DNA of 64,000 bases. Source: Adineta vaga. Lineage: Eukaryota; Animalia; Rotifera. Below, piece by piece: positions 1 to 36,511 of this stretch (positions within the stretch are counted from its first letter, which is position 1; every line of letters begins with the position of its first letter). A program made the translations under genes and the position numbers. The stretch lies in the NCBI GenBank assembly GCA_021613535.1, contig CP075494.1, positions 13,578,001 to 13,642,000 of the forward strand, given 5' to 3'. The notes beneath the pieces are model-generated. The model saw nothing but the letters and a program-made list of their open reading frames with translations. It had not been told where the DNA came from and searched no databases.

Positions 1-3000
1 ACCCAAAGTGGAAGCAGCTAAGCCAGCTAATGAACAATCATGTGTTATTGGTCAAGATACTCAGATCACATGGAAATTTAGTGGTGTTGAGAAACCACAA
101 GTAACATGGCTCTTCAAAGGACAACCACTTACAACTAATGAACGATATCAAATCACCGAAGGTGAAGATGGAACATCGACACTAGCCATCAAGAGTGCTG
201 AACTCACTGACAAAGGTGTTTACACTGCGAAAGCAACAAACGCAGTGGGTGAAGCAGAAGCAAAAACAACACTCAACATTGCTGGTATCAAACCAGTGAT
301 CACGAATGATCTCGAAGGTACATTACAAGCAACGAAAGGTGAATCAATGACAATCAAACTACAAGTGACAGGTACACCTCGACCTGATGTCATTTGGTGT
401 CGAGGAAATGATGATCTTGTACCAAGTGATCGTATTCAAGTAGTAGCACCAGCAAGTGAAGGTGATGACACATACACACTGACAATTCTGAATGTTCAAC
501 CAGAAGATCAAGGTGATTATTCAGCTAAAATAAATAATGTTGGTGGATCACTCAAAACAAAGAAATGCAAAGTGACCGTTACAAGTAAGTTATCGAACCT
601 TTCATATGCTTTTTCTAGTCTTACTTTTAATAGAATTACCCGTCTTTGTGAGCAAACCAACAGCTCAAGAAGTCAAACAAGGTGAAACAGCGGTGTTCCA
701 AACAAAGATCGATGGATATCCCACACCTAAAGTCACATGGCTTCTCAATGGCAAACTATTGACAGCGAAAGAAGGCGCGCAAGTCGAACTCAATGCTGCA
801 ACTGGTGATGCCAAACTATCAATTCCTAAAGTTGATCTACAACAACATTCAGGCACAGTTACATGTCGACTCGAGAATCCACATGGGACTCAGGAAGAAA
901 CTGCACGACTCGATATTCTTGCTGCACCACTCATCACCACTCAACTGCCGAAACAAGAAGAAACAGTGAGTGGCAAAGATGTGACACTTCGAGTCGTTGT
1001 TCGAGGTTCACCACGACCTGAAGCACAATGGTTCTACAATGACACACCGGTACCTGCAGAGAATACCACATTTGATGAAGAAAAGAGCGAATATCAACTC
1101 ACAATAAAACAAGCCACAGTTGCTACAAGTGATGGAACATATCGTGTTGTGTTGAAGAATGATCTTGGAGAGAGTGAATCAACACCATGTGTATTGACAG
1201 TACTGGAACCAGTGAAGGTAACAAAGACAGCACCAGCGAGTGATGTTGTCGACTTGAAAGTGGGTGAAGCATTTGAATTATCGTTTGATGTTGACGGTAA
1301 AGAAGCACCAAAAGTACAATTGACCAAGGATGGCAAGGAAGTGAAGTTCAGTAGTGTTGAAGGTGTGAAACATGTATATTCGATTGGTGAAGTAAAACCG
1401 GAACATCAAGGCGTATACAAGTTGACAGCAAAGAACAAAACATCAACAGAAGAAAATATTGTAACATTGAAAGTGACAGGTATGTCATTTTGATTATTAA
1501 CTAAAACTCGTACCCAAGTTTCGATGCGTTGCTGCGTGAGGTATCTTCTTCATACTCCATATGATATTCGTAGATACTATAATCTTTGCATTTCCGATTT
1601 GTAAATAGCAACAATGCTATACGAGAAACATACCAATCATACCGAACTATAACGTCATTCAGTACCATAATCCATTATGTATGTGAATATAAATGAAAAG
1701 CTAGCTTGTTCATAAGATATGGCCTGCAGAGATAGTCGGAAGTTTTCCATGAAACTTAAAATATGTATATTTCTTACGATTATTCATACATATTTTAGCC
1801 CCACTAAATATTACACAATCATTAACTGATACGAATGTTCTTCTTGGACAAAATGCAACTCTATCAATCATCTGTGATGCTTTTCCAGCACCAAAAGTAA
1901 CCTGGTAAGTTATCTATAGAGCCCCCCAAAGAGGTCCAACGTCTATGATCATTATTTTTTCCAAAGGTTTTCGAATGACACCGAATTGAAAACATCCGCA
2001 AAACATAAGATTGAAGTCAAACAGAATGTCTTCTCACTCACTATCAACAAAGCAGACCATCCCGACGTTGGCACATATCGTGTTCACGTTGATAATGGTA
2101 TTGATCAAACTGATCAAACGGCGAAACTCAACGTCGGAGGTAATACTCTTCCTCTTCACAATCAAAAACAATGCCTATGCATATATTTATTCTCATTTCT
2201 AGTCAAACCAAAAGTGGAAGCAGCGAAGCCAGCCAACGAACAATCATGTGTCATTGGTCAAGATACACAAATCGCATGGCGATTCAGTGGTATTGAGAAA
2301 CCACAGGTGACATGGCTCTTCAATGGACAACCTCTTACAACTAATGAACGACATCAAATCACCGAAGGTGAAGATGGAACATCGACACTAGTCATCAAGA
2401 GTGCTGAACTTACTGACAAAGGTGTTTACACTGCAAAAGCAACAAATGCAGTGGGTGAAGCAGAAGCAAAAACAACACTCAACATTGCTGGTATCAAACC
2501 AGTGATCACGAATGATCTCGAAGGTACATTACAAGCAACGAAAGGTGAATCAATGACAATCAAACTACAAGTGACAGGTACACCTCGACCTGATGTCATT
2601 TGGTGTCGAGGAAATGATGATCTTGTACCAAGTGATCGTATTCAAGTAGTAGCACCAACAAGTGAAGGTGATGACACATACACATTGACAATTCTGAATG
2701 TTCAACCGGAAGATCAAGGTGATTATTCAGCTAAGATCAGTAATGTTGGTGGATCACTCAAATCGAAGAAATGCAAAGTCACTGTCATGAGTAAGTTTAT
2801 ATTCAGTTTTATGGCCCTCTGTTTTAAGTCACTGTATATTTCTCTAGAATCACCCGTCTTCGTGAACAAACCAATCTCGCAAGAAGTGAAACAAGGTGAA
2901 ACAGCAGTATTCGAAACACAGATCGATGGATATCCCACACCTAAAGTCACATGGCTTCTCAATGGCAAACCATTGACAGCGAAAGAAGGCGCACAAGTCG

Positions 3001-6000
3001 AACTCAATGCTGCAACTGGTGATGCCAAACTATCAATTCCTAAAGTTGATCTACAACAACATTCAGGCACAGTTACATGTCGACTCGAGAATCCACATGG
3101 GACTCAAGAAGAAACTGCACGACTCGATATTCTTGCTGCACCACTCATCACCACTCAACTACCGAAACAAGAAGAAACAGTGAGTGGCAAAGATGTGACA
3201 CTTCGAGTCGTTGTTCGAGGTTCTCCACGACCTGAAGCACAATGGTTCTTCAATGACACACCGGTACCTGCAGAGAATACCACATTTGATGAAGAAAAGA
3301 GCGAATATCAACTCACAATAAAACAAGCCACAGTTGCTACAAATGAAGGAACATATCGTGTTGTGTTGAAGAATGATCTTGGAGAAAGTGAATCAACACC
3401 ATGTGTATTGACAGTACTGGAACCAGTGAAGGTAACAAAGACAGCACCAGCAAGTGATGTTGTCGACTTGAAAGTGGGTGAAGCATTTGAATTATCGTTT
3501 GATGTTGATGGTAAAGAAGCACCAAAAGTACAATTGACCAAGGATGGCAAGGAAGTGAAGTTCAGTAGTGTTGAAGGTGTGAAACATGTGTATTCGATTG
3601 GTGAAGTAAAACCAGAACATCAAGGTGTATACAAATTGACAGCGAAGAATAAAACATCAACTGAAGAGATGACTGTGACACTCAATGTGACAGGTAGTGT
3701 TTCATAATAACGATTAGTGTCCTATCTATTCGAAGAAGTAGATGAATTTCGTAATCCTATTGTTGTGATCATGCGAAAATTAGAATGAAATGAGTAGAAA
3801 ATGTCTTATAAGGTTGGGAAGTTAAGATGAGCTTATGGGGGAGAAATGATTCACTGAAAAATCAATATTTTTCTATCACATAAAAATAAAAATGTGGATC
3901 TATCATAGCGTCTTTAGATTCGATAGTTTCAGTTAAAGCAACCATTACTTGAGAGAAGTTATAGTTTGAGAACAAGCGATTATAACTATTGATAACTACA
4001 TAGATCTTACCCTAGGAAATTCAATAACACGTTTCTATAAATCGAGAGAACTTGTTAACTTCATAAAATTGTCCCATCTGCAAGGATCAATCGATCTATC
4101 ACATCACATCGTATATACTATGCAGACAATATTTTATATTCTATATGCGATTGCCAGAAATTTCTAATTCCCTCTCACTTAAGTACTAAAAGGTGATTCC
4201 TTACAGTCAGTATATATTTTAATGCTTTCCTTATAGCACCTCTCAATATCACACAATCACTAAGTGATACGAATGTTCTTCTTGGACAAAATGCAACTCT
4301 ATCAATAACGTGCGACGCATTTCCTGCACCAAAAGTAACTTGGTAAGTATTTTCTCACAATACATGCAACAAACTTCGAGTAACCAACATTTCTTTTCTC
4401 AAAAGGTTTTCGAATGACACCGAATTGAAAACATCCGCAAAACATAAGATTGAAGTCAAACAGAATGTCTTCTCACTCACTATCAACAAAGCAGACCATC
4501 CCGACGTTGGCACATATCGTGTTCACGTTGATAATGGTATTGATCAAACTGATCAAACGGCGAAACTCAACGTCGGAGGTAATACTCTTCCTCTTCACAA
4601 TCAAAAACAATGCCTATGCATATATTTATTCTCATTTCTAGTCAAACCAAAAGTGGAAGCAGCGAAGCCAGCTAACGAACAATCATGTGTCATTGGTCAA
4701 GATACACAAATCGCATGGCGATTCAGTGGTATTGAGAAACCACAGGTGACATGGCTCTTCAATGGACAACCTCTTACAACTAATGAACGACATCAAATCA
4801 CCGAAGGTGAAGATGGAACATCGACACTAGTCATCAAGAGTGCTGAACTTACTGACAAAGGTGTTTACACTGCAAAAGCAACAAATGCAGTGGGTGAAGC
4901 AGAAGCAAAAACAACACTCAACATTGCTGGTATCAAACCAGTGATCACGAATGATCTCGAAGGTACATTACAAGCAACGAAAGGTGAATCAATGACAATC
5001 AAACTACAAGTGACAGGTACACCTCGACCTGATGTCATTTGGTGTCGAGGAAATGATGATCTTGTACCAAGTGATCGTATTCAAGTAGTAGCACCAACAA
5101 GTGAAGGTGATGACACATACACATTGACAATTCTGAATGTTCAACCGGAAGATCAAGGTGATTATTCAGCTAAGATCAGTAATGTTGGTGGATCACTCAA
5201 ATCGAAGAAATGCAAAGTCACTGTCATGAGTAAGTTTATATTCAGTTTTATGGCCCTCTGTTTTAAGTCACTGTATATTTCTCTAGAATCACCCGTCTTC
5301 GTGAACAAACCAATCTCGCAAGAAGTGAAACAAGGTGAAACAGCAGTATTCGAAACACAGATCGATGGATATCCCACACCTAAAGTCACATGGCTTCTCA
5401 ATGGCAAACCATTGACAGCGAAAGAAGGCGCACAAGTCGAACTCAATGCTGCAACTGGTGATGCCAAACTATCAATTCCTAAAGTTGATCTACAACAACA
5501 TTCAGGCACAGTTACATGTCGACTCGAGAATCCACATGGGACTCAAGAAGAAACTGCACGACTCGATATTCTTGCTGCACCACTCATCACCACTCAACTA
5601 CCGAAACAAGAAGAAACAGTGAGTGGCAAAGATGTGACACTTCGAGTCGTTGTTCGAGGTTCTCCACGACCTGAAGCACAATGGTTCTTCAATGACACAC
5701 CGGTACCTGCAGAGAATACCACATTTGATGAAGAAAAGAGCGAATATCAACTCACAATAAAACAAGCCACAGTTGCTACAAATGAAGGAACATATCGTGT
5801 TGTGTTGAAGAATGATCTTGGAGAAAGTGAATCAACACCATGTGTATTGACAGTACTGGAACCAGTGAAGGTAACAAAGACAGCACCAGCAAGTGATGTT
5901 GTCGACTTGAAAGTGGGTGAAGCATTTGAATTATCGTTTGATGTTGATGGTAAAGAAGCACCAAAAGTACAATTGACCAAGGATGGCAAGGAAGTGAAGT

Positions 6001-9000
6001 TCAGTAGTGTTGAAGGTGTGAAACATGTGTATTCGATTGGTGAAGTAAAACCAGAACATCAAGGTGTATACAAATTGACAGCGAAGAATAAAACATCAAC
6101 TGAAGAGATGACTGTGACACTCAATGTTACAGGTAATGTTTCATAATAACGATTAGTGTCCTATCTATTCGAAGAAGTAGATGAAGTTCTCAATCATATT
6201 GTTTCGGTCATAATAAAGTTGGATAGAAATCAGTGGAAAGTGTCTTATCACATTCCTAAGCTAATATTATCTTATGGAGAAGGAATCATACACTGAAAAA
6301 TCAAATTTTTTCTACCAAAAAAAAATGCATATACGGATGTATCCTAGGATCTTTAGAATCGATGGTTTCAGTTAAAGCCACGATTACTTGAAATCAGTTA
6401 CAGTGCAAAAACGGATGGATTATCTTTCATACCATCCTCGACGAACATCTGGTAGCGTGACTGAATGTTTGGAATGAAAACTTCTTTTTGATGATTTTTC
6501 GAAGGAGTCCGTAAAAGAAACTTTTTGACAGATTTATGACTGGTGTTCGAAAATACTTTTTGGATAGATGATCTTAACAAAGAAAGTTCGAAAACTCTTC
6601 AGATTAACTTAGAGCTCAGAATCTAATATATCTTGCTGTGTTATTGATACAGTCCTTTAGATCCTAAGGAGCGGTATCCCATGAAGTTTATATAGATGAA
6701 TTTACAATGGCAGGAAGTTCGTGAAAAAATGTGTCGCGAGATCGTCAAGAACAAAATGACTTTTCTTTCGTTTTTGTTTTATCGACAATGGTGCAGAGTA
6801 AAACCACTGTAACTAAATATCTCTCTTTAATGTACACCACCAGGATTCTTCTAACAAGTTTTGCTTGTTTTATTGCATATTCCCTGAGCACATTTTATGG
6901 AACCAACCGTCTGTATCGATTTCAACAATTTGAAAAATTGAAAGAAAACGATAATTAGAATAATTTATAACGATATATCAGAAGACAAATATCATGATTG
7001 AGGAATTTGATCAATTCGAATAGCATATATGACGAAAATGAAGACGAAAGTTACAAAGGAGAGAGAGATAGAGAGAATTAAGAGATGCAAAAGAAAAGAG
7101 CCATCATTTTACGTTCTTAAATAGACGACCATATTGGTCAACAAAATACTGAATCTCAAAATGATCTCACATCAGAACAAAAGATAAATATAATAAGAGG
7201 AGGGGAACGTGCTTTTTTCGATAGAGAATTAAAAATAACTTCGTATTTCCCTGAGTTTCATGTGAAATATTCTTAAACAAAAACAAGAATATGTTACTGA
7301 TTATGAATGGCACTACAATAAAAACTAAAACAAATAAAACAATTTCTCAACCAAAGCTATTTCAGAGTTTTAAAACCTACATAAAAAGGAAAGGTATAGA
7401 TGGGTATGGATAGAGTAGCTGATATCTTGCTAATGAATGTTCTCCCTTTGTCCTCGACCTTCATCGACTCCTATATCCTGGCCTCTAATTATAATTTTCA
7501 TTTGATCCTTAACGAATGATAGTAAATTATGCTTACGCTCTTCTGAACATATCCCATCAGGAACATCCTGTTTATTTAGTTCGATTTTGTAAATCCGACA
7601 TCTCTGAAGAAAAGTTTCAATATTTTTTTCTCCAGGAATTCGTAACAGACATCTGTTACGGGAGTTCCGAATGACGAGGTGCTACGAAACGTAATTTTCC
7701 CGTAAAAACGAGCAAATCTAAATATTGATCAATAACAAGTTTCTGTAAATCAAGAGAACTTGTTAACTTCATAAAATTGTCCCATCTGCAAGGATCAATC
7801 GATCTATCACATCACATCGTATATACTATGCAGACAATATTTTATATTCTATATGCGATTGCCAGAAATTTCTAATTCCCTCTCACTTAAGTACTAAAAG
7901 GTGATTCCTTACAGTCAGTATATATTTTAATGCTTTCCTTATAGCACCTCTCAATATCACACAATCACTAAGTGATACGAATGTTCTTCTTGGACAAAAT
8001 GCAACTCTATCAATAACGTGCGACGCATTTCCTGCACCAAAAGTAACTTGGTAAGTATTTTCTCACAATACATGCAACAAACTTCGAGTAACCAACATTT
8101 CTTTTCTCAAAAGGTTTTCGAATGACACCGAATTGAAAACATCCGCAAAACATAAGATTGAAGTCAAACAGAATGTCTTCTCACTCACTATCAACAAAGC
8201 AGACCATCCCGACGTTGGCACATATCGTGTTCACGTTGATAATGGTATTGATCAAACTGATCAAACGGCGAAACTCAACGTCGGAGGTAATACTCTTCCT
8301 CTTCACAATCAAAAACAATGCCTATGCATATATTTATTCTCATTTCTAGTCAAACCAAAAGTGGAAGCAGCGAAGCCAGCTAACGAACAATCATGTGTCA
8401 TTGGTCAAGATACACAAATCGCATGGCGATTCAGTGGTATTGAGAAACCACAGGTGACATGGCTCTTCAATGGACAACCTCTTACAACTAATGAACGACA
8501 TCAAATCACCGAAGGTGAAGATGGAACATCGACACTAGTCATCAAGAGTGCTGAACTTACTGACAAAGGTGTTTACACTGCAAAAGCAACAAATGCAGTG
8601 GGTGAAGCAGAAGCAAAAACAACACTCAACATTGCTGGTATCAAACCAGTGATCACGAATGATCTCGAAGGTACATTACAAGCAACGAAAGGTGAATCAA
8701 TGACAATCAAACTACAAGTGACAGGTACACCTCGACCTGATGTCATTTGGTGTCGAGGAAATGATGATCTTGTACCAAGTGATCGTATTCAAGTAGTAGC
8801 ACCAACAAGTGAAGGTGATGACACATACACATTGACAATTCTGAATGTTCAACCAGAAGATCAAGGTGATTATTCAGCTAAAATAAATAATGTTGGTGGA
8901 TCACTCAAATCGAAGAAATGCAAAGTCACTGTCATGAGTAAGTTTATATTCAGTTTTATGGCCCTCTGTTTTAAGTCACTGTATATTTCTCTAGAATCAC

Positions 9001-12000
9001 CCGTCTTCGTGAACAAACCAATCTCGCAAGAAGTGAAACAAGGTGAAACAGCGGTATTCGAAACACAGATCGATGGATATCCCACACCTAAAGTCACATG
9101 GCTTCTCAATGGCAAACCATTGACAGCGAAAGAAGGCGCACAAGTCGAACTCAATGCTGCAACTGGTGATGCCAAACTATCAATTCCTAAAGTTGATCTA
9201 CAACAACATTCAGGCACAGTTACATGTCGACTCGAGAATCCACATGGAACTCAGGAAGAAACTGCACGACTCGATATTCTTGCTGCACCACTCATCACCA
9301 CTCAACTACCGAAACAAGAAGAAACAGTGAGTGGCAAAGATGTGACACTTCGAGTCGTTGTTCGAGGTTCACCACGACCTGAAGCACAATGGTTCTACAA
9401 TGACACACCGGTACCTGCAGAGAACACTGCATATGACGAAGAAAAGAGTGAATATCAGTTGTTGATCAAAGAAGCAACTGTTGCTGCAAATGAAGGAACA
9501 TATCGTGTTGTGTTGAAGAATGATCTTGGAGAGAGTGAATCAACACCATGTGTATTGACAGTACTGGAACCAGTGAAAGTGACAAAGACAGCACCAGCGA
9601 GTGATGTTGTCGACTTGAAAGTGGGTGAAGCATTTGAATTATCGTTTGATGTTGATGGTAAAGAAGCACCAAAAGTACAATTGACCAAGGATGGCAAGGA
9701 AGTGAAGTTCACCAATGTTGAAGGTGTAAAACATGTATACTCAGTTGGTGAAGTAAAACCGGAACATCAAGGTGTATACAAGTTGACAGCGAAGAACAAA
9801 ACTTCAACAGAAGAAATAACTGTTACAGTCAATATTACAGGTATGTGAATATCATAAGATAATTGTGTATTTCGTACCGTAGTCGTTCTCTTTGGGTCGA
9901 AATAAATACCTGGATAATAGGCATTTTCAGTCGCATAAGTATAAATTTGAAATTTGGCATACAGTCGTGTAATCAGTTTAAACTAATTAATGAATATTTT
10001 TGTCTCTACTCAATCACTTCTTTGATATCTTGAATTAGCTATACAGTCATACGGGAGGTGTTCATAATCTCGATGTACCGTGGTTTTGTTTACGATTTAA
10101 TTTTTAGTTTTGATATTGATGATATTTTGTATTTTGTACTTTGGTCGAATTCTCTATCATCATGATTTCTCCAACAGTACATAGCTTCGGAAGTTATTGG
10201 AACAAGGATGAATACGAACAAAGATTCAATACATTAGATCCGATCTAGCGTCGACAAATTTATAAATTGCGTAATTCCCGCTAACTTTAGTAGCGAGTTG
10301 ATAATTCACATTTTTTGACTATTTAAAAGACTATCAAATACGTAAGATAACATTTGTGCTGTATCGTGATATGATACTACAACTTTTATTTCGCAGAAGC
10401 AGACGTATTAAGTGATGGTAGCTTCAACATTCTTACTTATAGCAGACCGAAATAAGAATTGCTTTTTAGAAACCACAATACGACGAAACATTTCGACTAG
10501 CGACGTGCGTTCTTCAAATGAAACGTTATAACTTGATATGGGTATCTTGCTAACAAGTAATCATTCATAATGATTACGCATCGTATCCGATTCTGCTAGA
10601 TTCGTCACATCACACTAATATCAAAACATCAATTGATATATAGTGTTCGATACAGTATTAAAAGAGATTTTATCTTTGAGAAAGTTCAAACGATGTCTAT
10701 TTTCCAGTTCAATTCGTATTATTTTTCAACATTAGATTCCATAATATATCTCTTACTTTCTTTCTTAGCTCCATTAAATATTGTACAATCACTGACTGAT
10801 ACAACTGTCCTACTTGGTCAGAGCGGAATACTACAGATAACTTGCGATGCCTTTCCAGCACCGAAAGTTACCTGGTAAGATACATCGACTTATTCCATAC
10901 CATATAACTTTTTCATCATTTATACGTTTAAGGCTTTTTAACGACACCGAATTGAAAACATCAGCAAAACATAAGATTGAAGTCAAACAGAATGTCTTCT
11001 CACTCACTATCAACAAAGCAGACCATCCCGACGTTGGCACATATCGTGTTCACGTTGATAATGGTATTGATCAAACTGATCAAACGGCGAAACTCAACGT
11101 CGGAGGTAATACTCTTCCTCTTCACAATCAAAAACAATGCCTATGCATATATGTATTCTCATTTCTAGTCAAACCAAAAGTAGAAGCAGCTAAGCCAGCT
11201 AATGAACAATCATGTGTCATTGGTCAAGATACACAAATCGCATGGCGATTCAGTGGTATTGAGAAACCACAGGTGACATGGCTCTTCAATGGACAACCTC
11301 TTACAACTAATGAACGACATCAAATCACCGAAGGTGAAGATGGAACATCGACACTAGCTATCAAGAGTGCTGAACTCACTGACAAAGGTGTTTACACTGC
11401 GAAAGCAACAAATGCAGTGGGTGAAGCAGAAGCAAAAACAACACTCAACATTGCTGGTATCAAACCAGTGATCACGAATGATCTCGAAGGTGCTTTACAA
11501 GCAACGAAAGGTGAATCAATGACAATCAAACTACAAGTGACAGGTACACCTCGACCTGATGTCATTTGGTGTCGAGGAAATGATGATCTTGTACCAAGTG
11601 ATCGTATTCAAGTAGTAGCACCAACAAGTGAAGGTGATGACACATACACATTGACAATTCTAAATGTTCAACCAGAAGATCAAGGTGATTATTCAGCTAA
11701 GATCAGTAATGTTGGTGGATCACTCAAATCGAAGAAATGCAAAGTCACTGTCATGAGTAAGTTGTTGAAACCTCCATATGCTGTTTCTAGTTTTAATTCT
11801 AATAGAATCGCCTGTTTTCATTACGAAACCAACGACACAAGAAGTGAAACAAGGTGAAACAGCGGTATTCGAAATAAAGATCGATGGATATCCTACACCT
11901 AAAGTCACATGGCTTCTCAATGGCAAACCATTGACAGCGAAAGAAGGCGCACAAGTGGAACTTAATGCTGCAACTGGTGATGCCAAACTATCAATTCCTA

Positions 12001-15000
12001 AAGTTGATCTACAACAACATTCAGGCACAGTTACATGTCGACTCGAGAATCCACATGGAAGTCAGGAAGAAACTGCACGACTCGATATTCTCGCTGCACC
12101 ACTCATCACCACTCAACTACCGAAACAAGAAGAAACAGTGAGTGGCAAAGATGTGACACTTCGAGTCGTTGTTCGAGGTTCACCACGACCTGAAGCACAA
12201 TGGTTCTTCAATGACACACCATTTGCTGCGGAGAACACTGCATATGACGAAGAAAAGAGTGAATATCAGTTGTTGATCAAAGAAGCAACTGTTGCTGCAA
12301 ATGAAGGAACATATCGTGTTGTGTTGAAGAATGATCTTGGAGAGAGTGAATCAACACCATGTGTATTGACAGTACTGGAACCAGTGAAAGTAACAAAGAC
12401 AGCACCAGCGAGTGATGTTGTCGACCTGAAAGTGGGTGAAGCATTTGAATTATCGTTTGATGTTGATGGTAAAGAGGCACCAAAAGTACAATTGACCAAG
12501 GATGGCAAGGAAGTGAAGTTCAGTAGTGTTGAAGGTGTGAAACATGTTTATTCGATTGGTGAAGTAAAACCGGAACATCAAGGTGTATACAAGTTGACAG
12601 CGAAGAACAAAACTTCAACAGAAGAAATAACTGTTACACTCAATGTTACAGGTAAATTAGGATGCGTTTCTATTACATAATTTTTATTTAAACCGAAGTG
12701 AAACGAGCTATAATTAGTTTATTACTGCAAAGTATTAATGACGATATTACTTGATATTGTTGTTGATTAGATGATGTTCGTTTTCATTGTGAACTAGATA
12801 TCGGTCAGAGCGAAGATCATTAGTAGAACGAACTAAGTACTGATTCTTGTTTCATTAGATAGATAGTTTAGATTCGTTTATAATTACGACAATGGTTAAT
12901 TCTATAATATGCTCTCGGACAAACGTTAATCGTGATCTAAACGAAAAAGATGACACAATAATAACTATGGTAATTTACTTCCTCTGTGACCATCGAATGA
13001 TATTCATGTTTCGAACGGTTAAATGGAATTTCGATAGCGCTGAAATACTTGGATAGTTGTCAAAACTCGTAAAGAATTTGGATAGTTATTTATTTAAAAA
13101 ATACAATAGAAATCCATAGAACTATATCAGCTGGATTCTGATTGATGCAATATGCAGTAATATGTATGCTGTCTCATTGCTAGTTGTTTTCAAAGTAGAT
13201 ATTTTTTTCGTATTCGAAATGATGTATGTGGTGCATCCAAACCGCAATACTCTGCGATATTTTATATAGTCTTCCTCTTTATTCTAACATTTAAGCATAT
13301 TTAGAAAACTTCGAATATACTTGTTAATGTACGGTAGGGATGTGACTGTGAGTGAAGGTGCAGATACTATAAATATTCACACCCTCCATTTGACAGAACC
13401 GTGTCGAACAAACGCAACAAGGTTTTATTTTAACTGTTGCAATACTAGTCAAAACTATAGATTGTGATAAGCTGTATTACCTAGTCAGTTCCTTCGAGCA
13501 ACTATCAAGTATATAAGTCATACAATGGACGAAAGAACTTTCATACACACAGTTAGAGCTAAAGCATGTAATTGTTCAATTTTTTGATTCAGCCTTTCAC
13601 TCTAAGAGTCAAAAAGACAAGATATTGATTTTATTCTTGGAAATGAGCATTAATACTACCTAACATTTTATTTACGCAAATATAGTTTTTAAAAGTAGAA
13701 ATACTTACTCACTACTTATTTTATAGCACCACTAAATATTGCTCAATCACTCACCGATATCAATGTACTACTCGGTCAACCTGGCACCTTGTCTCTTACT
13801 TGCGATGCCTTTCCAGTGCCTAAAGTTACATGGTTAGTATTCACTTTATTTAAATCAATTCTATATATTTTATCACCCGTTTGCTTACAGGTTCTTCAAT
13901 GATGTTGAACTCAAGAATTCGTCTAAACACAAAATCGAAGTCAAACAAAATGTATTCTCACTTACTGTAAACAAATGTGATCATCCCGACGTTGGCATTT
14001 ATCGTGCACATGTTGATAATGGTATTGATCAAACTGATCAAACGGCGAAACTCAACGTCGGAGGTAATACTCTTCCTCTTCACAATCAAAAACAATGCCT
14101 ATGCATATATGTATTCTCATTTCTAGTCAAACCAAAAGTAGAAGCAGCTAAGCCAGCTAATGAACAATCATGTGTTATTGGTCAAGATACTCAAATTGCA
14201 TGGCGATTCAGTGGTATTGAGAAACCACAGGTGACATGGCTCTTCAATGGACAACCTCTTACAACTAATGAACGACATCAAATCACCGAAGGTGAAGATG
14301 GAACATCGACACTTGCTATCAAGAGTGCTGAACTTACTGACAAAGGTGTTTACACTGCGAAAGCAACAAATGCAGTGGGTGAAGCAGAAGCAAAAACAAC
14401 ACTCAACATTGCTGGTATCAAACCAGTGATCACGAATGATCTCGAAGGTACATTACAAGCAACGAAAGGTGAATCAATGACAATCAAACTACAAGTGACA
14501 GGTACACCTCGACCTGATGTCATTTGGTGTCGAGGAAATGATGATCTTGTACCAAGTGATCGTATTCAAGTAGTAGCACCAACAAGTGAAGGTGATGACA
14601 CATACACATTGACAATTCTAAATGTTCAACCAGAAGATCAAGGTGATTATTCAGCTAAAATAAATAATGTTGGTGGATCACTCAAATCGAAGAAATGCAA
14701 AGTCACTGTCATGAGTAAGTTTATATTCAGTTTTATCGTTCTCTCTTTTCACTCATTGTATATTTCTCTAGAATCACCCGTCTTTGTGAATAAACCAACG
14801 ACACAAGAAGTGAAACAAGGTGAAACAGCGGTATTCGAAACACAGATCGATGGATATCCCACACCTAAAGTCACATGGCTTCTCAATGGTAAACCATTGA
14901 CAGCGAAAGAAGGCGCACAAGTGGAACTTAATGCCACGACTGGTGATGCCAAACTATCAATTCCTAAAGTTGATCTACAACAACATTCAGGCACAGTTAC

Positions 15001-17904
15001 ATGTCGACTCGAGAATCCACATGGAACTCAAGAAGAAACTGCACGACTCGATATTCTTGCTGCACCACTCATCACCACTCAATTACCGAAACAAGAAGAA
15101 ACAGTGAGTGGCAAAGATGTGACACTTCGAGTCGTTGTTCGAGGTTCACCACGACCTGAAGCACAATGGTTCTTCAATGACACACCGGTACCTGCAGAGA
15201 ACACTGCATATGACGAAGAAAAGAGTGAATATCAGTTGTTGATCAAAGAAGCAACTGTTGCTGCAAATGAAGGAACATATCGTGTTGTGTTGAAGAATGA
15301 TCTTGGAGAGAGTGAATCAACACCATGTGTATTGACAGTACTGGAACCAGTGAAAGTAACAAAGACAGCACCAGCGAGTGATGTTGTCGACTTGAAAGTG
15401 AGTGAAGGATTGGAATTATCGTTTGATGTTGATGGTAAAGAAGCACCAAAAGTACAATTAACTAAGGATGGCAAAGAAGTGAAGTTCAGTAGTGTTGAAG
15501 GTGTAAAACATGTATATTCTATTGGTGAAGTAAAACCAGAATATCAAGGCGTATACAAGTTGACAGCGAAGAACAAAACATCAACAGAAGAAATAACTGT
15601 CACAGTTAATATTACAGGTAAACTAGATTTTTTTTCTTTCGTGAATTAATCGATAATACTAATGTATATGGATAAGATATTGAGGGAACGCCATCTTCAA
15701 GAAAACGCAGTATTATCATTGGTATGAGCCATTGCATTTGACCTCTATTGAATCAGAACACTTGTATTCTACTTCAATTACTTCAGTAAAAATAGAGTAT
15801 TTCCTATGAAACTCGAAGTCGCTGAATTGTCTTTTCGGCTATTGTGCTATTCGCCTGTACAAAAAGCAGAAATTAATAGGTAGACAATTTTCATGATATT
15901 TCACAACTACAAGGAATAATTCAGATTTATTTAAACCAAGTACTTTGAAAGAGGCGGTTATTCTTAAGCACAAGCAACACCTTTCTTTTTAACTTACATA
16001 ATTAATTTCAATTCTTTTTAGCACCACTGAACATTACTCAATCACTCACCGATATCAATGTACTACTCGGTCAACCTGGCACCTTGTCTCTTACTTGCGA
16101 TGCCTTTCCAGTGCCTAAAGTTACATGGTTAGTATTCACTTTATTTAAATCAATTCTATATATTTTATCACCCGTTTGCTTACAGGTTCTTCAATGATGT
16201 TGAACTCAAGAATTCGTCTAAACACAAAATCGAAGTCAAACAAAATGTATTCTCACTTACTGTAAACAAATGTGATCATCCCGACGTTGGCATTTATCGT
16301 GCACATGTTGATAATGGTATTGATCAAACTGATCAAACGGCGAAACTCAACGTCGGAGGTAATACTCTTCCTCTTCACAATCAAAAACAATGCCTATGCA
16401 TATATGTATTCTCATTTCTAGTCAAACCAAAAGTAGAAGCAGCTAAGCCAGCTAATGAACAATCATGTGTTATTGGTCAAGATACTCAAATTGCATGGCG
16501 ATTCAGTGGTATTGAGAAACCACAGGTGACATGGCTCTTCAATGGACAACCTCTTACAACTAATGAACGACATCAAATCACCGAAGGTGAAGATGGAACA
16601 TCGACACTAGCTATCAAGAGTGCTGAACTCACTGACAAAGGTGTTTACACTGCGAAAGCAACAAATGCAGTGGGTGAAGCAGAAGCAAAAACAACACTCA
16701 ACATTGCTGGTATCAAACCAGTGATCACGAATGATCTCGAAGGTACATTACAAGCAACGAAAGGTGAATCAATGACAATCAAACTACAAGTGACAGGTAC
16801 ACCTCGACCTGATGTCATTTGGTGTCGAGGAAATGATGATCTTGTACCAAGTGATCGTATTCAAGTAGTAGCACCAACAAGTGAAGGTGATGACACATAC
16901 ACATTGACAATTCTGAATGTTCAACCGGAAGATCAAGGTGATTATTCAGCTAAGATCAGTAATGTTGGTGGATCACTCAAATCGAAGAAATGCAAAGTTA
17001 CTGTCATGAGTAAGTTGTTGAAACCTCCATATGCTGTTTCTAGTTTTAATTCTAATAGAATCGCCTGTTTTCATTACGAAACCAACGACACAAGAAGTGA
17101 AACAAGGTGAAACAGCGGTATTCGAAATAAAGATCGATGGATATCCCACACCTAAAGTCACATGGCTTCTCAATGGCAAACCATTGACAGCGAAAGAAGG
17201 CGCACAAGTGGAACTTAATGCCACGACTGGTGATGCCAAACTATCAATTCCTAAAGTAGATCTACAACAACATTCAGGCACAGTTACATGTCGACTCGAG
17301 AATCCACATGGAACTCAAGAAGAAACTGCACGACTCGATATTCTCGCTGCACCACTCATCACCACTCAACTACCGAAACAAGAAGAAACAGTGAGTGGCA
17401 AAGATGTGACACTTCGAGTCGTTGTTCGAGGTTCACCACGACCTGAAGCACAATGGTTCTTCAATGACACACCGGTACCTGCAGAGAACACTGCATATGA
17501 CGAAGAAAAGAGTGAATATCAGTTGTTGATCAAAGAAGCAACTGTTGCTGCAAATGAAGGAACATATCGTGTTGTGTTGAAGAATGATCTTGGAGAGAGT
17601 GAATCAACACCATGTGTATTGACAGTACTGGAACCAGTGAAAGTGACAAAGACAGCACCAGCGAGTGATGTTGTCGACTTGAAAGTGGGTGAAGCATTTG
17701 AATTATCGTTTGATGTTGATGGTAAAGAAGCACCAAAAGTACAATTGACCAAGGATGGCAAAGAAGTGAAGTTCACCAATGTTGAAGGTGTGAAACATGT
17801 GTACTCAGTTGGTGAAGTAAAACCAGAACATCAAGGCGTATACAAATTAATAGCCAGAAACAAAACATCAACTGAAGAGATGACTGTTACACTCAATGTT
17901 ACTG
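1..17904 (+). repeat. Tandem array of near-identical 6-Ig super-repeat units: U1 <1-1479 (partial), U2 1799-3693, U3 4237-6132, U4 7945-9840, U5 10769-12651, U6 13727-15617, U7 16022-17904
   Basis: Each full unit has 4 exons (U2: 106+173+588+846 = 1713 nt = 571 codons). DNA and translations are almost identical between units. Inter-unit introns are 319, 543, 1812, 928, 1075, 404 and 55 nt. Confidence 0.96.
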
Positions 17905-20900
17905 GTAAATATAACCATTTAACAGAAAATAAAATCGTGAAATCATCGTTTTATTCTAGCTCCGTTAAATATATCACAACCCCTTAGTGATATTAATGTA
18001 TTGATGGGTCAAAGCGGTACTCTGACGTTCGTCTGTGATGCATTCCCTGCTCCGAAAGTAACATGGTATGGCGATGACGTGATTTCGATAGGAATACTCA
18101 ACATTAAAATTTTTCTTTTCGTTTTCCTAGGTTTATGAATGATAATGAGTTGAAAAATTCTGCTAAACATAAAATTGAAGCAAAACAAAATGTGTTTAGT
18201 TTAACTGTCAATAAATGTGAGAACGGTGATATTGGTATTTATCGTGCTCAGATAGATAATGGTATTGATAGAGGCGAGCAATCAGCCAAGTTGAACGTTG
18301 GTATTAAACCTACTGTGGTTGGGAAACCAACTGATGTTCAAGTCCAAATTGGCCAATCAGCTCGTCTCCAAGTACAATTTGCTGGACAACCTTTACCAGA
18401 CATTACATGGACTCGCGCTGATGGTCAACCGTTAGGTGAAAATGTCAAGATTGCCAATGATGAAAATGGCCTTGCTGTCTTAACATTCGATGCCACATCT
18501 TTGACAGACAAATGTGGCTATATTGCTAAAGCAACAAATATTGTTGGATTCGTCGAACAGAAGATCAATTTAGATGTTAAAGGTACGTATCATTGGATAT
18601 AATGAATACACAATCAATTCCCTTTTTTCGTACATGTTTAGAAATCAAACCAACGATTATTCGTGATCTCGAAGCAGCTATCAATGCTACAAAAGGTCAA
18701 CCAATGACTCTTACTATCGAAGCTACTGGTAATCCGAAGCCCACTGTTCGATTCTTCCGTGGGGTAGAAGAACTCGTCGCAGCAGAAGGTCAAATTGAGT
18801 TGAAAGAATTGGAAGATGGTCAAACATTTACTGCAACTATTCTAAGTATGCAACCGAACCATCAAGGTGAATACACAGCTACAGTTCAAAATACAGGTGG
18901 AAGTGCAAAGAGTAAGAAATGCAAAGTTACCGTAACAAGTAAGGCTTAATTTATTAGTCGATCGATACAAAAGAGAGACACATATGTTTCTTTTTCTTAC
19001 ATTTAGAAACTCCAACGTTTACTCGTACACCACAAGATTTAACTGTGGCAGAAAAGTCTGAAGCTGTTTTTGAATGTGAAATCGATGCGTTCCCAGCAGC
19101 TAAAGTTACTTGGCTAAAAGATGGTAAACCATTAACTGTAAAGGAAGGTGTTGAAATTCAAGCACAAGCTGATAAAGGTCTCTATACACTTCGTATTCCT
19201 CAAGCTGATACTGTAAAACATATGGGTACTATACTTTGTCGTGCTGAAAATGCAATAGGAAATGTTGAACATCCAGTGACACTGAATATCACTACAGCGC
19301 CAACACTGAAAGCACAATTGAAAGATACCGAAGTATTACGTGGACAAGATGCAACATTTTCGGTGGATGTTCAAGGTTTTCCAATACCAGAAATAACTTG
19401 GACACGAGGAACGGATAAAGTTCTCGAAGTAGAAGTCGAAAAAATATCGATTTCTGACGATCGAAAACAATTAACAATACATAATGCACAGATTGATAAT
19501 GAAGATGAATATAATGTAAGAATGGTGAATGAATTTGGTGAAATAACAAGTAAAGCAAAATTAAGTGTATTAGGTATGTTCTATTGTATGTTATCTAACT
19601 CTCATTGCTTTGTGTCTTTGAAGAATTACCGGAAATTCAACCACTTTTGGAAGATAAAAATGTTCAAATTCGTCAACAAATTGAATATTCAACAATAATT
19701 ACTGGTCGACCATTACCCGAAATTCAATGGTTGAAAAATCAAAAACCATTGAGTGCATCTCCGCCACATATTCAAATTGAAACTACTGAAGAGAATGTTA
19801 TTAAAACAACACTTCGCATCGATAATATTCAATCTGATGACGATGCTACATATACAATTCGAGTCAAAAATCGTGCTGGACAAAAAGAATCAACATCGAA
19901 ATTAAATGTCCAAGCCAAACTCTCATTTCTAAAAGCATTTAAAGATGAAAATGTTATTCAAGGACAACCAATTACATTTCAATGTCAAATTGAAGCTATA
20001 CCAAAACCGAAAGTAACTTTCTATCTAAATGATCAAGAATTGAAATCGGGCGGAAAAATTAAAGTTGAATCGAAAGGTGATGTTCATACGTTATCATATT
20101 CGAAAGTTGATTTAATCGATAGTGGTATCATTAAAGCAATCGCTGATAATGGTTTAGATAAAGACGAAATAACTGCAAAATTAAATGTCTGCTTGAAACC
20201 AAGTCTTGTAGGCAAACCAACTGATGCTCAAGTTTCAATCGGTCAACCAGCACGATTACAATGTTCATTTACTGGATTACCTATGCCAGAATTGAAATGG
20301 TCACGTGTTGATGGTCAGCCATTGAATGAAGGAATTGAAATAGCTAATGATGAAAATCAAGGAATCGCTGCTTTAGTATTTAATGCAACAGCAATGGCTG
20401 ACAAAGGAGCTTACATGGTTAAAGCAACAAATGTTGTTGGATCAGTTGAACAAAAACTCAATCTTGATGTTAAAGGTACGTATCATTGGATATAATGTAT
20501 AAATAATCAATTCCCTTTTTTCATACATGTTTAGAAATCAAACCAACGATTATTCGTGATCTCGAAGCAGCTATCAATGCTACAAAAGGTCAACCAATGA
20601 CTCTTACTATCGAAGCTACTGGTAATCCGAAGCCCACTGTTCGATTCTTCCGTGGGGTAGAAGAACTCGTCGCAGCAGAAGGTCAAATTGAGTTGAAAGA
20701 ATTGGAAGATGGTCAAACATTTACTGCAACTATTCTAAGTATGCAACCGAACCATCAAGGTGAATACACAGCTACAGTTCAAAATACAGGTGGAAGTGCA
20801 AAGAGTAAGAAATGCAAAGTTACCGTAACAAGTAAGGCTTAATTTATTAGTCGATCGATACAAAAGAGAGACACATATGTTTCTTTTTCTTACATTTAGA

Positions 20901-35900: not shown

Positions 35901-36134
35901 GAAAATCGTTTTGGTGTTAGTGAAGGTTTATTATCAACACGTGTTAAACCAACACGATTATTAGAAACAAAACCAGCAACCAATCTTGATTCAACAGCTG
36001 CTAGTTATTTTGAAAAAAATATAGACCATAATGATTTCAATTTTGTTTTATATCATGATAGTCCCGCGTCAACAACATTTGATAAATTGAAATTTGGTGA
36101 TGATATTGAAGAATATATTAAAAATGTTTGGTAA
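1..36134 (+). CDS. Giant titin-like Ig/Fn3 muscle protein, multi-exon, 5' end outside the window; about 78 Ig + 20 Fn3, over 9,000 aa in the window, ending ...KFGDDIEEYIKNVW*
   Basis: Continuous I-set Ig motifs (P.P.VTW, D.G.Y...A.N..G) then Fn3 motifs (W.PP..DGG..I.GY.IE, Y.FRV.AEN..G.S.P). ORFs join in frame across canonical GT-AG introns, e.g. 585-633, 1480-1798, 1905-1966, 2140-2202, 2791-2847 ... 33415-33481, 34088-34149. Last exon 34150-36134. Confidence 0.93.
6400..7730. mobile_element. ~1.3-kb insertion in the U3-U4 intron, probably a decayed transposon remnant
   Basis: Absent from the homologous U2-U3 intron (3694-4236), whose two ends align with 6133-6400 and 7730-7944. Weak inverted similarity between ~6411-6443 and ~7672-7704; hairpin at 7641-7660. 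Confidence 0.5.
18573..19419 (+). repeat. ~847-bp near-perfect direct repeat, copy 1 (copy 2 at 20466-21312)
   Basis: Constant 1893-nt offset, includes two introns, only a few mismatches in the first intron; flanks are strongly diverged. Confidence 0.93.
20466..21312 (+). repeat. ~847-bp near-perfect direct repeat, copy 2
   Basis: Matches 18573-19419 from GATGTTAAAGGTACG to GGAACGGATAAA. Confidence 0.93.
23305..28165 (+). CDS. Titin-like gene: unique tandem Ig segment (~16 Ig of the E.P..F...L.D....E....LECE type, as in distal I-band titin/obscurin)
   Basis: Exons 22845-23854, 23909-24751, 24805-25080, 25149-25697, 25765-26043, 26113-26703 and 26764-28785 carry repeated ELPVDFEKPL / EIPIEFVRPL / EAPVEFVRPL domain starts. 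Confidence 0.85.
28166..36134 (+). CDS. Titin-like gene: C-terminal Fn3-rich segment, Fn3x3-Igx2-Fn3x3-Igx2-Fn3x14, then a ~55-aa tail
   Basis: Fn3 starts DKPSKPKNL, DPPSAPEAP, DKPGPPLDL ... SRPGQPSGPM. No protein-kinase motifs before the stop at 36132-36134. Confidence 0.85.
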
Positions 36135-36511
36135 ACAATTAGAACAATCTAACCGATTATGATTATTGTTTCTTTTTTGTTTTGAGAAAAAAAAAGAAGA
36201 AGAAAACAATTCTTCTTCTTTTGTTTGTCATAGTTCGCTTGATTGTATACGAAAAGATCAATTCCATATTATCGGTCTAATGTGTTTTATAGGCATCAAT
36301 ATAAATGCTTTGTGTGTGTGTGCGTTTGAACCTTCTCTTTTTGTGTTAACCAAAATTTATGGTCCCCGAAAGGAAAATTTTGTAATGAGATGCGAAAAAA
36401 AGAATAATTGTGCGATTCAGATTGCTCCTCCGATCGTTATGATTACTTCTTTTTTTTCTATATCGTTGGAATGTGGCGGTGAAAGTGTTTGTTTTTCTTT
36501 TCTTATTTAAC

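What the first reader, a model, noticed from the sequence alone, without database searches (positions are those of the whole stretch)
1..17904. Titin-like gene with at least 7 near-identical 6-Ig super-repeats under concerted evolution
Seen: 571-codon, four-exon units whose exons and short internal introns are nearly identical. The 63-nt intron differs at about one position across U2-U7. The long inter-unit introns are mostly unrelated in sequence and length (319-1812 nt). Simple recent duplication would have copied those introns too. Inference: an old array whose coding cores are repeatedly homogenised by gene conversion or unequal exchange. Known: adjacent Ig domains in titins are usually very divergent, thought to limit domain-swap misfolding. 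A period of 6 keeps identical domains non-adjacent while allowing expansion. This could be a copy-number-tunable elastic filament in a highly contractile animal.
Basis: partly seen in the sequence, partly recalled or inferred. Interest (0 to 1): 0.8.

Follow-up and report, generated by a model that had tools for sequence, protein, structure and literature searches.

The report
Homogenised six-Ig repeats in rotifer titin
A giant titin-like muscle gene of a bdelloid rotifer holds seven tandem copies of a six-immunoglobulin-domain block; the block array is older than the species carrying it, yet copying between the blocks keeps them nearly identical within each species.

Summary
Window 1-17904 holds seven tandem units of four exons (106+173+588+846 nt = 571 codons = six I-set Ig domains). 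Internal introns are 49-63 nt and inter-unit introns 319-1812 nt. The genome has exactly seven copies. It matches the six-chromosome Adineta vaga assembly.

The gene is a giant titin/sallimus-like protein. It has N-terminal Ig domains, two long low-complexity spring-like exons, well over 100 Ig domains and a C-terminal FN3 run. No kinase was found.

- Informative sites form a mosaic (PHI-like p<0.0002), with identical tracts of 159-1458 nt.
- For the same unit pairs, dS is 1.3-2.4 in exons a+b but 0.01-0.23 in exons c and d.
- Identity falls from 98% to 75% inside one intron pair.
- Two other bdelloid genomes carry the array between the same flanks (8 and at least 5 units). Their units cluster by species, except an 81-nt stretch that clusters by position.

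"Nearly identical" holds only for the core. Exon a is 69-100% identical.

Six-Ig super-repeats and the anti-aggregation argument are already published for vertebrate titin. This is a new, probably convergent, member of a known kind. Function is inferred, not tested.

The parts
1..1479 (+). Unit U1 (domains D2-D6): exon c runs from 4 nt upstream of the window to 584, a 49-nt intron follows, and exon d is 634-1479. Its D1 equivalent lies upstream of the window (-346..-68) at 44% amino-acid identity.
1799..3693 (+). Unit U2: exons 1799-1904, 1967-2139, 2203-2790, 2848-3693
   Evidence: six I-set domains
4237..6132 (+). Unit U3: exons 4237-4342, 4406-4578, 4642-5229, 5287-6132. The 5' part is identical to U4 and the 3' part to U2.
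7945..9840 (+). Unit U4: exons 7945-8050, 8114-8286, 8350-8937, 8995-9840
10769..12651 (+). Unit U5: exons 10769-10874, 10933-11105, 11169-11756, 11806-12651
13727..15617 (+). Unit U6: exons 13727-13832, 13891-14063, 14127-14714, 14772-15617
16022..17904 (+). Unit U7: exons 16022-16127, 16186-16358, 16422-17009, 17059-17904. Exons a and b are like U6; intron 3 is identical to that of U5.
3694..4236 (+). Inter-unit intron I23, a paralogue of I34. Identity is 52/53 over the first 53 nt, 165/219 over the next 219 nt and 213/216 over the last 216 nt. These steps mark tract ends.
6133..7944 (+). Inter-unit intron I34, the longest (1812 nt). It contains an insert of about 1.3 kb (6405-7728) whose two ends match one other place in the genome (C1:14089332-14089828), so it looks like a mobile element.
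3268..3348 (+). 81-nt alpha/beta stretch of exon d (domain D5), shown here for U2. The alpha form is in U1 (1054-1134), U2 and U3 (5707-5787). The beta form is in U4 (9415-9495), U5 (12226-12306), U6 (15192-15272) and U7 (17479-17559). The alpha copies group with the first units of the arrays in species B and C.
17952..21453 (+). Diverged super-repeats downstream of the array, 33-62% amino-acid identity to the matching domains. They include a second similar pair, 18255-19560 and 20145-21453. That pair is 89% identical, more than either copy is to its orthologue in species B (about 77%).
21454..28790 (+). Further tandem I-set Ig exons of the same gene
28973..36131 (+). Mixed Ig/FN3 stretch followed by a run of FN3 domains. 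The reading frame ends at 36131 and no kinase domain follows.

Best explanation
Window 1-17904 is the central part of the tandem-Ig spring region of a giant titin/sallimus-like gene. The gene lies on the + strand, running from about 41 kb upstream of the window to window position 36131. The organism is a bdelloid rotifer, and the assembly fits Adineta vaga AV20.

The whole region is built from an ancient six-Ig super-repeat. Its flanking copies have drifted to 30-49% amino-acid identity.

Seven central copies are kept alike by non-reciprocal copying between units (interlocus gene conversion). Occasional unequal exchange changes unit number. Conversion tracts of roughly 0.15-1.5 kb cover exons together with the short internal introns. 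They end in or near the long, unique inter-unit introns. As a result the unit core (3' exon b, intron 2, exon c, exon d) is 91-100% identical, while the unit edges (exon a, intron 1, the long introns) stay old and different.

Shown here: the anatomy, the mosaic, the age of the array, the clustering by species, and purifying selection (dN/dS about 0.12).

Inferred, not shown:
- The protein is a cytoplasmic elastic filament.
- Forty near-identical Ig domains add uniform extensible length.
- The six-domain period keeps identical domains five apart, which would limit misfolding between neighbours.
- Because all inter-domain introns are phase 1, whole units or exon blocks could be skipped in frame.
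For: Anatomy.

Domains: six I-set per unit. Titin is the best solved-structure match for the Ig exons (6fwx, 3b43) and for the FN3 run (8g4l titin chain, E 2.5e-91). Upstream lie a 2449-aa T/Q/V/P-rich exon and a 2981-aa A/E/K/Q exon. None of the six domains has both canonical disulfide cysteines (sequence).

Mosaic: 3970 of 13203 pairs of informative sites fail the four-gamete test, and compatible sites cluster (PHI-like 0.101 against 0.301 on permutation, p<0.0002). A Sawyer-type run test finds identical tracts U2-U3 1458 nt, U3-U4 913 nt, U6-U7 580 nt, U4-U7 300 nt and U5-U7 159 nt, each p<0.0002.

Age against homogenisation: dS between U2-5 and U6/7 is 1.3-2.4 in exons a+b. It is 0.007-0.11 in exon c and 0.005-0.23 in exon d. 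Orthologous flank dS is 0.47 to species C and 1.0-1.1 to species B.

Tract ends: I23 against I34 is 52/53, then 165/219, then 213/216 identical.

Other species: the same four-exon units occur with colinear flanks. The first unit starts at exon c in all three species. Species B has 8 units and species C at least 5.

Trees: units are monophyletic by species for exon c and exon d at 93-100% support. An 81-nt stretch splits by position across species with 99/99 support. The same split is seen in named Adineta and Rotaria proteins.

Intron 2 differs between species in length and sequence but is near-identical within each species. Its identity therefore reflects copying, not constraint.

Selection: dN/dS is 0.06-0.18 among units.
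Against: No transcript, read-level or population data were available. Exon inclusion, unit number in the second haplotype and the rate of exchange are therefore untested.

Exon a plus the 5' part of exon b places the A. vaga units in two groups, but the AU test does not reject their monophyly (p 0.14).

The alpha/beta stretch was picked after seeing the data. Its AU p of 0.045 is weak on its own.

GC-biased conversion is not supported. Array GC3 is about double that of flanking exons. However, the least homogenised part has the highest GC3, and a polarised count shows no excess of W>S changes (p 0.52).

Species B units are only weakly homogenised (mean dS 0.91).

Species B and C are unnamed metagenome contigs.

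Mechanical function is inference from homology.
Confidence: 0.8

Rival explanations
1. Unequal crossing-over (gain and loss of units), not gene conversion, is the main homogenising process.
For: Unit number differs between species: 7 in A. vaga and 8 in species B.

U3 has a U4-like 5' part and a U2-like 3' part. It sits between two paralogous introns, I23 and I34, as a single unequal crossover would leave it.

In species C, intron 1 alternates (u2 resembles u4, u3 resembles u5), which suggests a two-unit duplication.
Against: Unequal crossovers duplicate the intervening intron, yet I12, I45, I56 and I67 have no detectable similarity to each other or to I23/I34.

U5 and U7 share intron 3 while U6, lying between them, does not.

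I23 and I34 are only 75% identical in their middle, although the adjoining tracts are 98-100% identical. The duplication is therefore older than the present identity.
Confidence: 0.12
2. Independent recent tandem duplications in each lineage, with fast turnover of introns and no homogenisation of an old array.
For: Units cluster by species. Unit numbers differ between species. Exons c and d have low dS within A. vaga.
Against: The array borders are identical in three species, including a first unit that begins at exon c.

In exons a+b of the same units, dS is 1.3-2.4. That exceeds the flank dS to both other species.

The alpha/beta stretch is shared by position across species and with Rotaria.

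The mosaic pattern and four-gamete failures also argue against it.
Confidence: 0.05
3. Assembly artefact: repeat units wrongly multiplied, collapsed or over-polished towards one another.
For: Near-identity of long stretches (U2-U3 99.9% over 1.46 kb) is the kind of sequence that assemblers and polishers handle badly. Read data could not be examined.
Against: Each unit is anchored by unique long introns, which occur once in the genome where checked, and by unit-specific versions of exon a, intron 1 and intron 3.

All seven frames are intact.

Two independent long-read metagenome assemblies of other bdelloids show the same architecture.

Annotated proteins of Adineta ricciae and Rotaria species run from D6 into D1.
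Confidence: 0.03

Closest known systems
6-Ig and 10-Ig super-repeats of the middle-Ig (I-band) segment of vertebrate titin/connectin (PMC12241362; Gautel 1996 as cited in PMC2196875)
   Same: Both are tandem I-set Ig domains of a giant elastic muscle protein, arranged with a period of six.

Copy number differs between lineages: 3 in human and zebrafish, 6 in elephant shark, 8 in whale shark, against 7 and 8 here.

Neighbouring domains are dissimilar. The same anti-coaggregation argument has been made for block duplication.
   Different: Vertebrate super-repeats encode one Ig per exon and have diverged from one another. Here six Ig domains sit in four exons and seven copies are 91-100% identical in their core through ongoing exchange.

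A domain-by-domain match to titin I65-I70 is not colinear (D2 best to I70, D3 and D4 both best to I67). There is therefore no evidence that the two six-fold periods are homologous. Convergence is more likely.
Drosophila sallimus/kettin, crayfish I-connectin and C. elegans TTN-1 (invertebrate titin-like proteins; from my own knowledge of the literature, not checked here)
   Same: All are giant proteins with long Ig runs, long low-complexity elastic repeats and some FN3 domains. Sallimus and I-connectin lack a kinase, as this gene does.
   Different: Kettin Ig domains are separated by linkers of about 35 residues. Here the domains abut, at about 95 residues per domain.

I know of no report of near-identical multi-Ig super-repeats under concerted evolution in those genes, and none turned up in the library.

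Sequence orthology to any of them was not tested.
Nebulin triplicate region and the human titin PEVK nine-exon triplication (PMC9109913, PMC12241362)
   Same: Both are multi-exon blocks of a giant sarcomeric gene repeated in tandem at very high identity. The nebulin triplicate region is prone to copy-number change.
   Different: Those are recent segmental duplications that carry their introns along. Here the long introns between units are unrelated and the array predates the species, so the similarity is maintained rather than merely young.
Central tandem Ig domains of obscurin (PMC2196875)
   Same: Groups of adjacent Ig domains show extremely high similarity. The authors attribute this to evolutionarily recent duplication.
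   Different: Obscurin shows no super-repeat pattern and its similar domains are adjacent. Here identical domains are always six apart.

Membership tests
Titin-like giant muscle proteins (titin/connectin, twitchin, projectin, TTN-1, sallimus, I-connectin) | Long uninterrupted runs of I-set immunoglobulin domains | tested here: met
   Six I-set domains per unit. There are runs of 10 or more in upstream and downstream exons. Titin is the top solved-structure match.
Titin-like giant muscle proteins (titin/connectin, twitchin, projectin, TTN-1, sallimus, I-connectin) | FN3 domains combined with Ig domains | tested here: met
   Ig/FN3 mix and an FN3 run at 28973-36131. The best match is the titin chain of the cardiac thick filament, 8g4l, E 2.5e-91.
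Titin-like giant muscle proteins (titin/connectin, twitchin, projectin, TTN-1, sallimus, I-connectin) | Long low-complexity elastic segment (PEVK or an analogue) | tested here: met
   A 2449-aa T/Q/V/P/S-rich repeat exon and a 2981-aa exon that is 81% A/E/K/Q lie upstream in the same strand and frame series. Elasticity itself was not tested.
Titin-like giant muscle proteins (titin/connectin, twitchin, projectin, TTN-1, sallimus, I-connectin) | Ser/Thr kinase domain near the C-terminus (titin, twitchin, projectin, TTN-1; absent in sallimus and I-connectin) | tested here: not met
   No kinase hit in any + strand open stretch from 28973 to 39445. The frame ends at 36131, and a separate gene with a signal peptide starts near 37.7 kb. 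The gene is therefore filed with the kinase-less members only.
Titin-like giant muscle proteins (titin/connectin, twitchin, projectin, TTN-1, sallimus, I-connectin) | Cytoplasmic, sarcomere-associated filament | not testable with these tools
   Indirect evidence only: none of D1-D6 keeps both canonical disulfide cysteines, and no VWA, EGF or other extracellular module was found.
Vertebrate titin middle-Ig super-repeat (homology of the six-fold period) | Domain-by-domain colinear correspondence with a vertebrate super-repeat | tested here: not met
   The multi-domain exons align in register with titin I65-I70. Single domains do not: D2 is best to I70, and D3 and D4 are both best to I67. Only one vertebrate fragment was compared.
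Tandem arrays under concerted evolution (interlocus gene conversion / unequal exchange) | Paralogous units more alike within a species than orthologous units between species, at an orthologous site | tested here: met
   The flanks are colinear in three species. Species clades have 93-100% support for exons c and d. Exon d dS is 0.17 within A. vaga against 0.89 and 1.27 between species.
Tandem arrays under concerted evolution (interlocus gene conversion / unequal exchange) | Mosaic ancestry along the unit (phylogenetic incongruence, long identical tracts) | tested here: met
   Four-gamete failures and the PHI-like permutation test; run test; segment identity tables.
Tandem arrays under concerted evolution (interlocus gene conversion / unequal exchange) | Evidence that the duplication is older than the similarity | tested here: met
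   dS in exons a+b is 1.3-2.4, above the flank dS between species. The alpha/beta stretch is shared by position across species. Five of the six inter-unit introns are unrelated to any other.
Tandem arrays under concerted evolution (interlocus gene conversion / unequal exchange) | GC-biased signature of conversion (supportive, not defining) | tested here: inconclusive
   GC3 is raised in the array in all three species. There is no excess of W>S changes in a polarised count, and GC3 is highest in the least homogenised part.
Hemicentin-type extracellular Ig arrays (one source names a relative 'hemicentin') | Signal peptide, N-terminal VWA domain, C-terminal EGF and fibulin-type modules, disulfide-bonded Ig domains | tested here: not met
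   No VWA or EGF hit anywhere in the gene. The canonical cysteine pair is missing in all six domains. The best structural relatives are titin.

The most novel reading that the evidence does not exclude
The six-domain period arose independently in rotifer and vertebrate titins because a physical rule sets it, either a minimum spacing between identical Ig domains or a packing period of the filament.

In bdelloids the uniformity of the spring units would itself be maintained. Conversion driven by frequent double-strand-break repair would keep the array homogeneous. Selection would preserve a distinct alpha-type unit at the array's 5' end across bdelloid families.
Probability: 0.15. Interest if true: 0.7.

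Novelty: new member of a known kind. Interest (0 to 1): 0.45.

Why it matters
This is a clean natural example of concerted evolution inside a single gene. The long unique introns act as fixed markers, so old duplication and recent copying can be told apart base by base.

It shows a six-Ig super-repeat spring in a spiralian titin-like protein, parallel to the one in vertebrate connectin. That makes the question of why the period is six testable by comparison.

The host is a bdelloid rotifer, where gene conversion and break repair are central to the debate on long-term asexuality. An 18-kb array with mapped tract ends could serve as a readout of ectopic conversion in mutation-accumulation or desiccation experiments.

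It does not reveal a new kind of molecule or mechanism.

Tried and rejected
1. Homology of the rotifer six-fold period with vertebrate titin I65-I70. The multi-domain exons aligned in register but single domains did not. Rejected as unsupported.

2. GC-biased gene conversion as the cause of the raised GC3. The polarised count was negative, and GC3 does not follow the degree of homogenisation. Left as unexplained.

3. Positional orthology from exon a plus the 5' part of exon b. The best tree splits the A. vaga units, but the AU test gives p 0.14, so it is not decisive.

4. An ohnologous array elsewhere in the genome. The only other matches, on contig C2 at 3.867-3.876 Mb, are 34-43% identical, so there is no second homogenised array.

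5. Orthology of the inter-unit introns between species. This was not attempted, because flank dS of 0.5-1.0 means the introns are saturated.

6. Literature on bdelloid titin, or on concerted evolution of titin Ig domains. Nothing was found.

7. The joined (spliced) 571-residue unit was not handed to any search tool. Searches were done exon by exon by reference. Joined sequence was built only inside local scripts, from the window file, for frame checks, dN/dS and domain mapping.

8. The large all-against-all protein search, structure prediction and RNA tools were not used, because nothing rested on them.

9. No contig looked human.

Full report
OBSERVATION

A repeat search and a self-BLAST find seven direct copies in window 1-17904. 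Their start-to-start spacings are 2214, 2439, 3708, 2811, 2966 and 2287 nt.

A seven-way alignment and splice-site mapping give the unit structure. There are four exons of 106, 173, 588 and 846 nt, which sum to 1713 nt or 571 codons. Every intron is bounded by GT..AG. The spliced frame is stop-free in all six complete units.

Internal introns are 58-63, 63 and 49-57 nt. Inter-unit introns are 319, 543, 1812, 928, 1075 and 404 nt. Each unit encodes six I-set Ig domains.

The introns sit at the D1/D2, D3/D4 and D6/D1 borders, all in phase 1. One further intron lies inside D1, in phase 2. This follows from the coordinates.

Three corrections apply:
- The identity is uneven. Exon c is 97.3-99.8% identical among U2-U7. 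Exon d is 91-99.9%. Exon b is 81-100%. Exon a is only 69-100%. Intron 2 differs at one base, but introns 1 and 3 exist in several unalignable forms.
- U1 begins at exon c. Its first domain lies just upstream of the window as a diverged copy.
- The genome holds exactly seven such units.

ORGANISM AND GENE

The window is C5:13578001-13642000 of a 100.8-Mb assembly in six contigs. The nearest proteins in public data are from Adineta and Rotaria. The assembly matches the description of the haploid six-chromosome A. vaga assembly AV20 (PMC8494291). The species name is an inference.

On the + strand the gene runs from about 41 kb upstream of the window to position 36131. Its parts, in order, are:
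- a few N-terminal Ig domains;
- a 2449-residue T/Q/V/P/S-rich repeat exon;
- a 2981-residue exon that is 81% Ala/Glu/Lys/Gln;
- some fifty Ig domains;
- the array;
- about thirty more Ig domains;
- an Ig/FN3 mix and an FN3 run.

The domain counts are rough estimates from open stretches and Pfam stretch counts.

Titin is the best solved-structure match for the Ig exons (6fwx, 3b43) and for the FN3 run (titin chain of 8g4l, E 2.5e-91).

No kinase domain is present. The frame ends at 36131, and the next open stretches belong to a small gene that starts with a signal peptide.

None of the six domains keeps both canonical disulfide cysteines, and no extracellular module was found.

I therefore file the gene as a kinase-less titin-like protein. 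From my own knowledge of those proteins it is nearest in layout to sallimus or I-connectin. It is not a hemicentin.

THE SUPER-REPEAT IS OLDER AND WIDER THAN THE ARRAY

Mapping the six domain types onto the rest of the gene shows the same D1-D2-D3-D4... order in the flanking Ig domains. It extends several super-repeats upstream and at least three downstream, at 30-49% amino-acid identity (62% for the D1 immediately downstream).

Within a unit the six domains are only 21-36% identical to each other.

A second similar pair lies just downstream, 18255-19560 and 20145-21453. The two copies are 89% identical to each other. That exceeds the roughly 77% identity of that region to its orthologue in species B.

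EVIDENCE FOR EXCHANGE BETWEEN UNITS

1. Mosaic. Of 163 informative sites among U2-U7, 3970 of 13203 pairs fail the four-gamete test. Compatible sites are clustered (PHI-like 0.101 against 0.301 under permutation, 0 of 5000 permutations as low). The groupings change along the unit:
   - U6+U7 against the rest across exon a to mid exon b;
   - U5+U7 across intron 3, with U6 lying between them and different;
   - U4-U7 against U1-U3 in mid exon d;
   - U4+U7 and U4+U6 near the 3' end.

2. Long identical tracts. A run test in the manner of Sawyer gives U2-U3 1458 nt, U3-U4 913 nt, U6-U7 580 nt, U4-U7 300 nt and U5-U7 159 nt. None was matched in 5000 permutations.

3. Uneven synonymous divergence. 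Between U2-5 and U6/7, dS is 1.3-2.4 in exons a+b. It is 0.007-0.11 in exon c and 0.005-0.23 in exon d. dN/dS is about 0.12 throughout.

4. Sharp steps in non-coding DNA. I23 and I34 are the only related pair of long introns. They are identical at 52 of 53 positions next to exon d, then at 165 of 219, and at 213 of 216 next to exon a. The extra length of I34 is an insert of about 1.3 kb. Its two ends match one other locus in the genome, so it looks like a mobile element.

5. Intron 2. This intron is 63 nt and near-identical in A. vaga. In the other two species it is about 52 nt and different in sequence, yet again similar within each species. Its conservation therefore reflects copying, not function.

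OTHER SPECIES

Two long metagenome contigs from other bdelloids carry the same four-exon units. Species B is ERZ26165376 ctg355622 and species C is ERZ25067493 ctg158072.

The flanks are colinear one-to-one with A. vaga on both sides in species B. In species C they are colinear on the 5' side, and the contig ends inside the array. In all three species the first homogenised unit starts at exon c.

Species B has eight units and species C at least five.

Orthologous flank dS is 0.47 to species C and 1.0-1.1 to species B. The dS of 1.3-2.4 between D1 exons inside the A. vaga array therefore predates both splits.

Trees of exon c and exon d place all units of each species in one clade with 93-100% support. 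Mean exon d dS is 0.17 within A. vaga, 0.34 within species C and 0.91 within species B. Between species it is 0.89-1.30.

The opposite pattern, clustering by position, was the one that would refute it.

There is one instructive exception, an 81-nt stretch of exon d in domain D5. It exists in two forms:
- The alpha form is carried by A. vaga U1-U3, species C units 1-2 and species B unit 1.
- The beta form is carried by all later units.

The split has 99/99 support. It is also visible in annotated proteins of A. ricciae, Rotaria sordida and R. magnacalcarata.

I chose this stretch after seeing the alignment, so its AU p of 0.045 should be read with care. Even so, it shows that two unit types already existed in order before these lineages separated. 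It also shows that homogenisation is incomplete at the array's 5' edge.

The same annotated proteins run from D6 straight into D1. They skip the introns as mapped here, which is independent support for the exon model.

MECHANISM

The most likely process is non-reciprocal copying between misaligned units during break repair or recombination. Tracts are a few hundred to about 1500 nt. They pass through the short introns and stop in or near the long unique introns. This accounts for the gradient from a homogeneous core to old unit edges.

Unequal exchange has also happened. Unit number is 7 here against 8 in species B. U3 is a U4/U2 hybrid flanked by paralogous introns.

It cannot be the main process, however, because it would duplicate the long introns. 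Five of the six long introns have no detectable similarity to any other.

An assembly artefact is unlikely. Each unit has unique anchors, all frames are intact, and two independent assemblies of other species agree. Reads could not be checked.

The functional reading is inference from homology and anatomy. It holds that the protein is an elastic filament, that its length is set by unit number and possibly by in-frame skipping of units, and that identical domains are kept five apart.

UNEXPLAINED

Third-position GC content in the array is about twice that of flanking Ig exons of the same gene in A. vaga (0.25-0.28 against 0.09-0.16) and in species C (0.19 against 0.09). It is also higher in species B (0.38 against 0.30).

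GC-biased conversion is the obvious idea, but two results do not support it. The least homogenised part has the highest GC3. A polarised count shows no excess of AT-to-GC changes in the array.

Array dS between A. vaga and species C (0.89) exceeds flank dS (0.47). This would follow if different ancestral unit types took over in each lineage.

COMPARISON WITH WHAT IS KNOWN

Six-Ig and ten-Ig super-repeats are established for the middle-Ig segment of vertebrate connectin. Their copy number varies between lineages. Block duplication has been explained there by the risk of co-aggregation of similar neighbouring domains (PMC12241362).

Obscurin has near-identical adjacent Ig domains but no super-repeat (PMC2196875). 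The nebulin triplicate region is a recent multi-exon segmental duplication (PMC9109913).

Three things are new here:
- the phylum;
- the four-exon packaging of six domains;
- the demonstration that an old array is kept alike by exchange rather than being merely young.

Single-domain matches to titin I65-I70 are not colinear, so the shared period of six is probably convergent.

I found no paper on bdelloid titin or on concerted evolution of titin Ig domains in the held library.

Earlier notes of this scan describe the same mosaic and the two upstream low-complexity exons. I used them only as context.

PROCEDURE NOTE

The spliced 571-residue unit has no single reference. Searches were therefore made exon by exon by reference, and the search with the joined unit was left out. 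Joined sequence was built only inside local scripts from the window file.

VERDICT

This is a well-documented new example of a known kind of system. Interest is moderate.

Noticed in passing
window 37596-39445 (+): A small gene sits between the titin-like gene and the next minus-strand gene. It has an N-terminal signal-peptide-like start (MAWLLLLLLSIVTFICGQ...) and a hydrophobic C-terminal tail. None of its four open stretches has a Pfam hit.
   Followed up: partly
window 47990-58632 (-): Large minus-strand open stretches, such as 49362-51170 and 55121-56527, have no Pfam hit. I did not test that.
   Followed up: no
window 6405-7728: An insert of about 1.3 kb in intron I34. Its two ends (12-111 and 1190-1298 of the insert) match the two ends of a stretch of about 0.5 kb at C1:14089332-14089828 on the opposite strand. 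There are weaker matches at two sites on C5. It looks like a low-copy non-autonomous mobile element.
   Followed up: partly
window 1-17904 compared with -16514..-1377 and 19599-36131: Third-position GC of the array exons is about double that of the other Ig/FN3 exons of the same gene. The same holds in two other species. A test for GC-biased fixation was negative, so the cause is unknown.
   Followed up: yes
L019:11867-20255 (species C): Intron 1 alternates between two forms along the array: units 2 and 4 share one form, units 3 and 5 the other. This suggests that a two-unit (12-Ig) block was duplicated in that lineage.
   Followed up: no
G000:C2:3867523-3875915 (-): A second gene rich in tandem Ig domains, 34-43% identical to the unit, with open stretches up to 1367 aa. 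It may be another titin-like gene or a much-diverged ohnologue. It has no homogenised array.
   Followed up: no
L016:5036-6112 (+), about 43 kb upstream of the window: A FAM199X-like open stretch lies just upstream of the first Ig exon (L016:8840-9373). It probably marks the 5' limit of the titin-like gene.
   Followed up: no
/scratch/B.fa 7494-23601 (L020+L018 merged, species B): In species B several inter-unit introns are only 54-80 nt and the others about 440-555 nt. Units there are much less alike (mean exon d dS 0.91) than in A. vaga, so the strength of homogenisation differs between lineages.
   Followed up: partly
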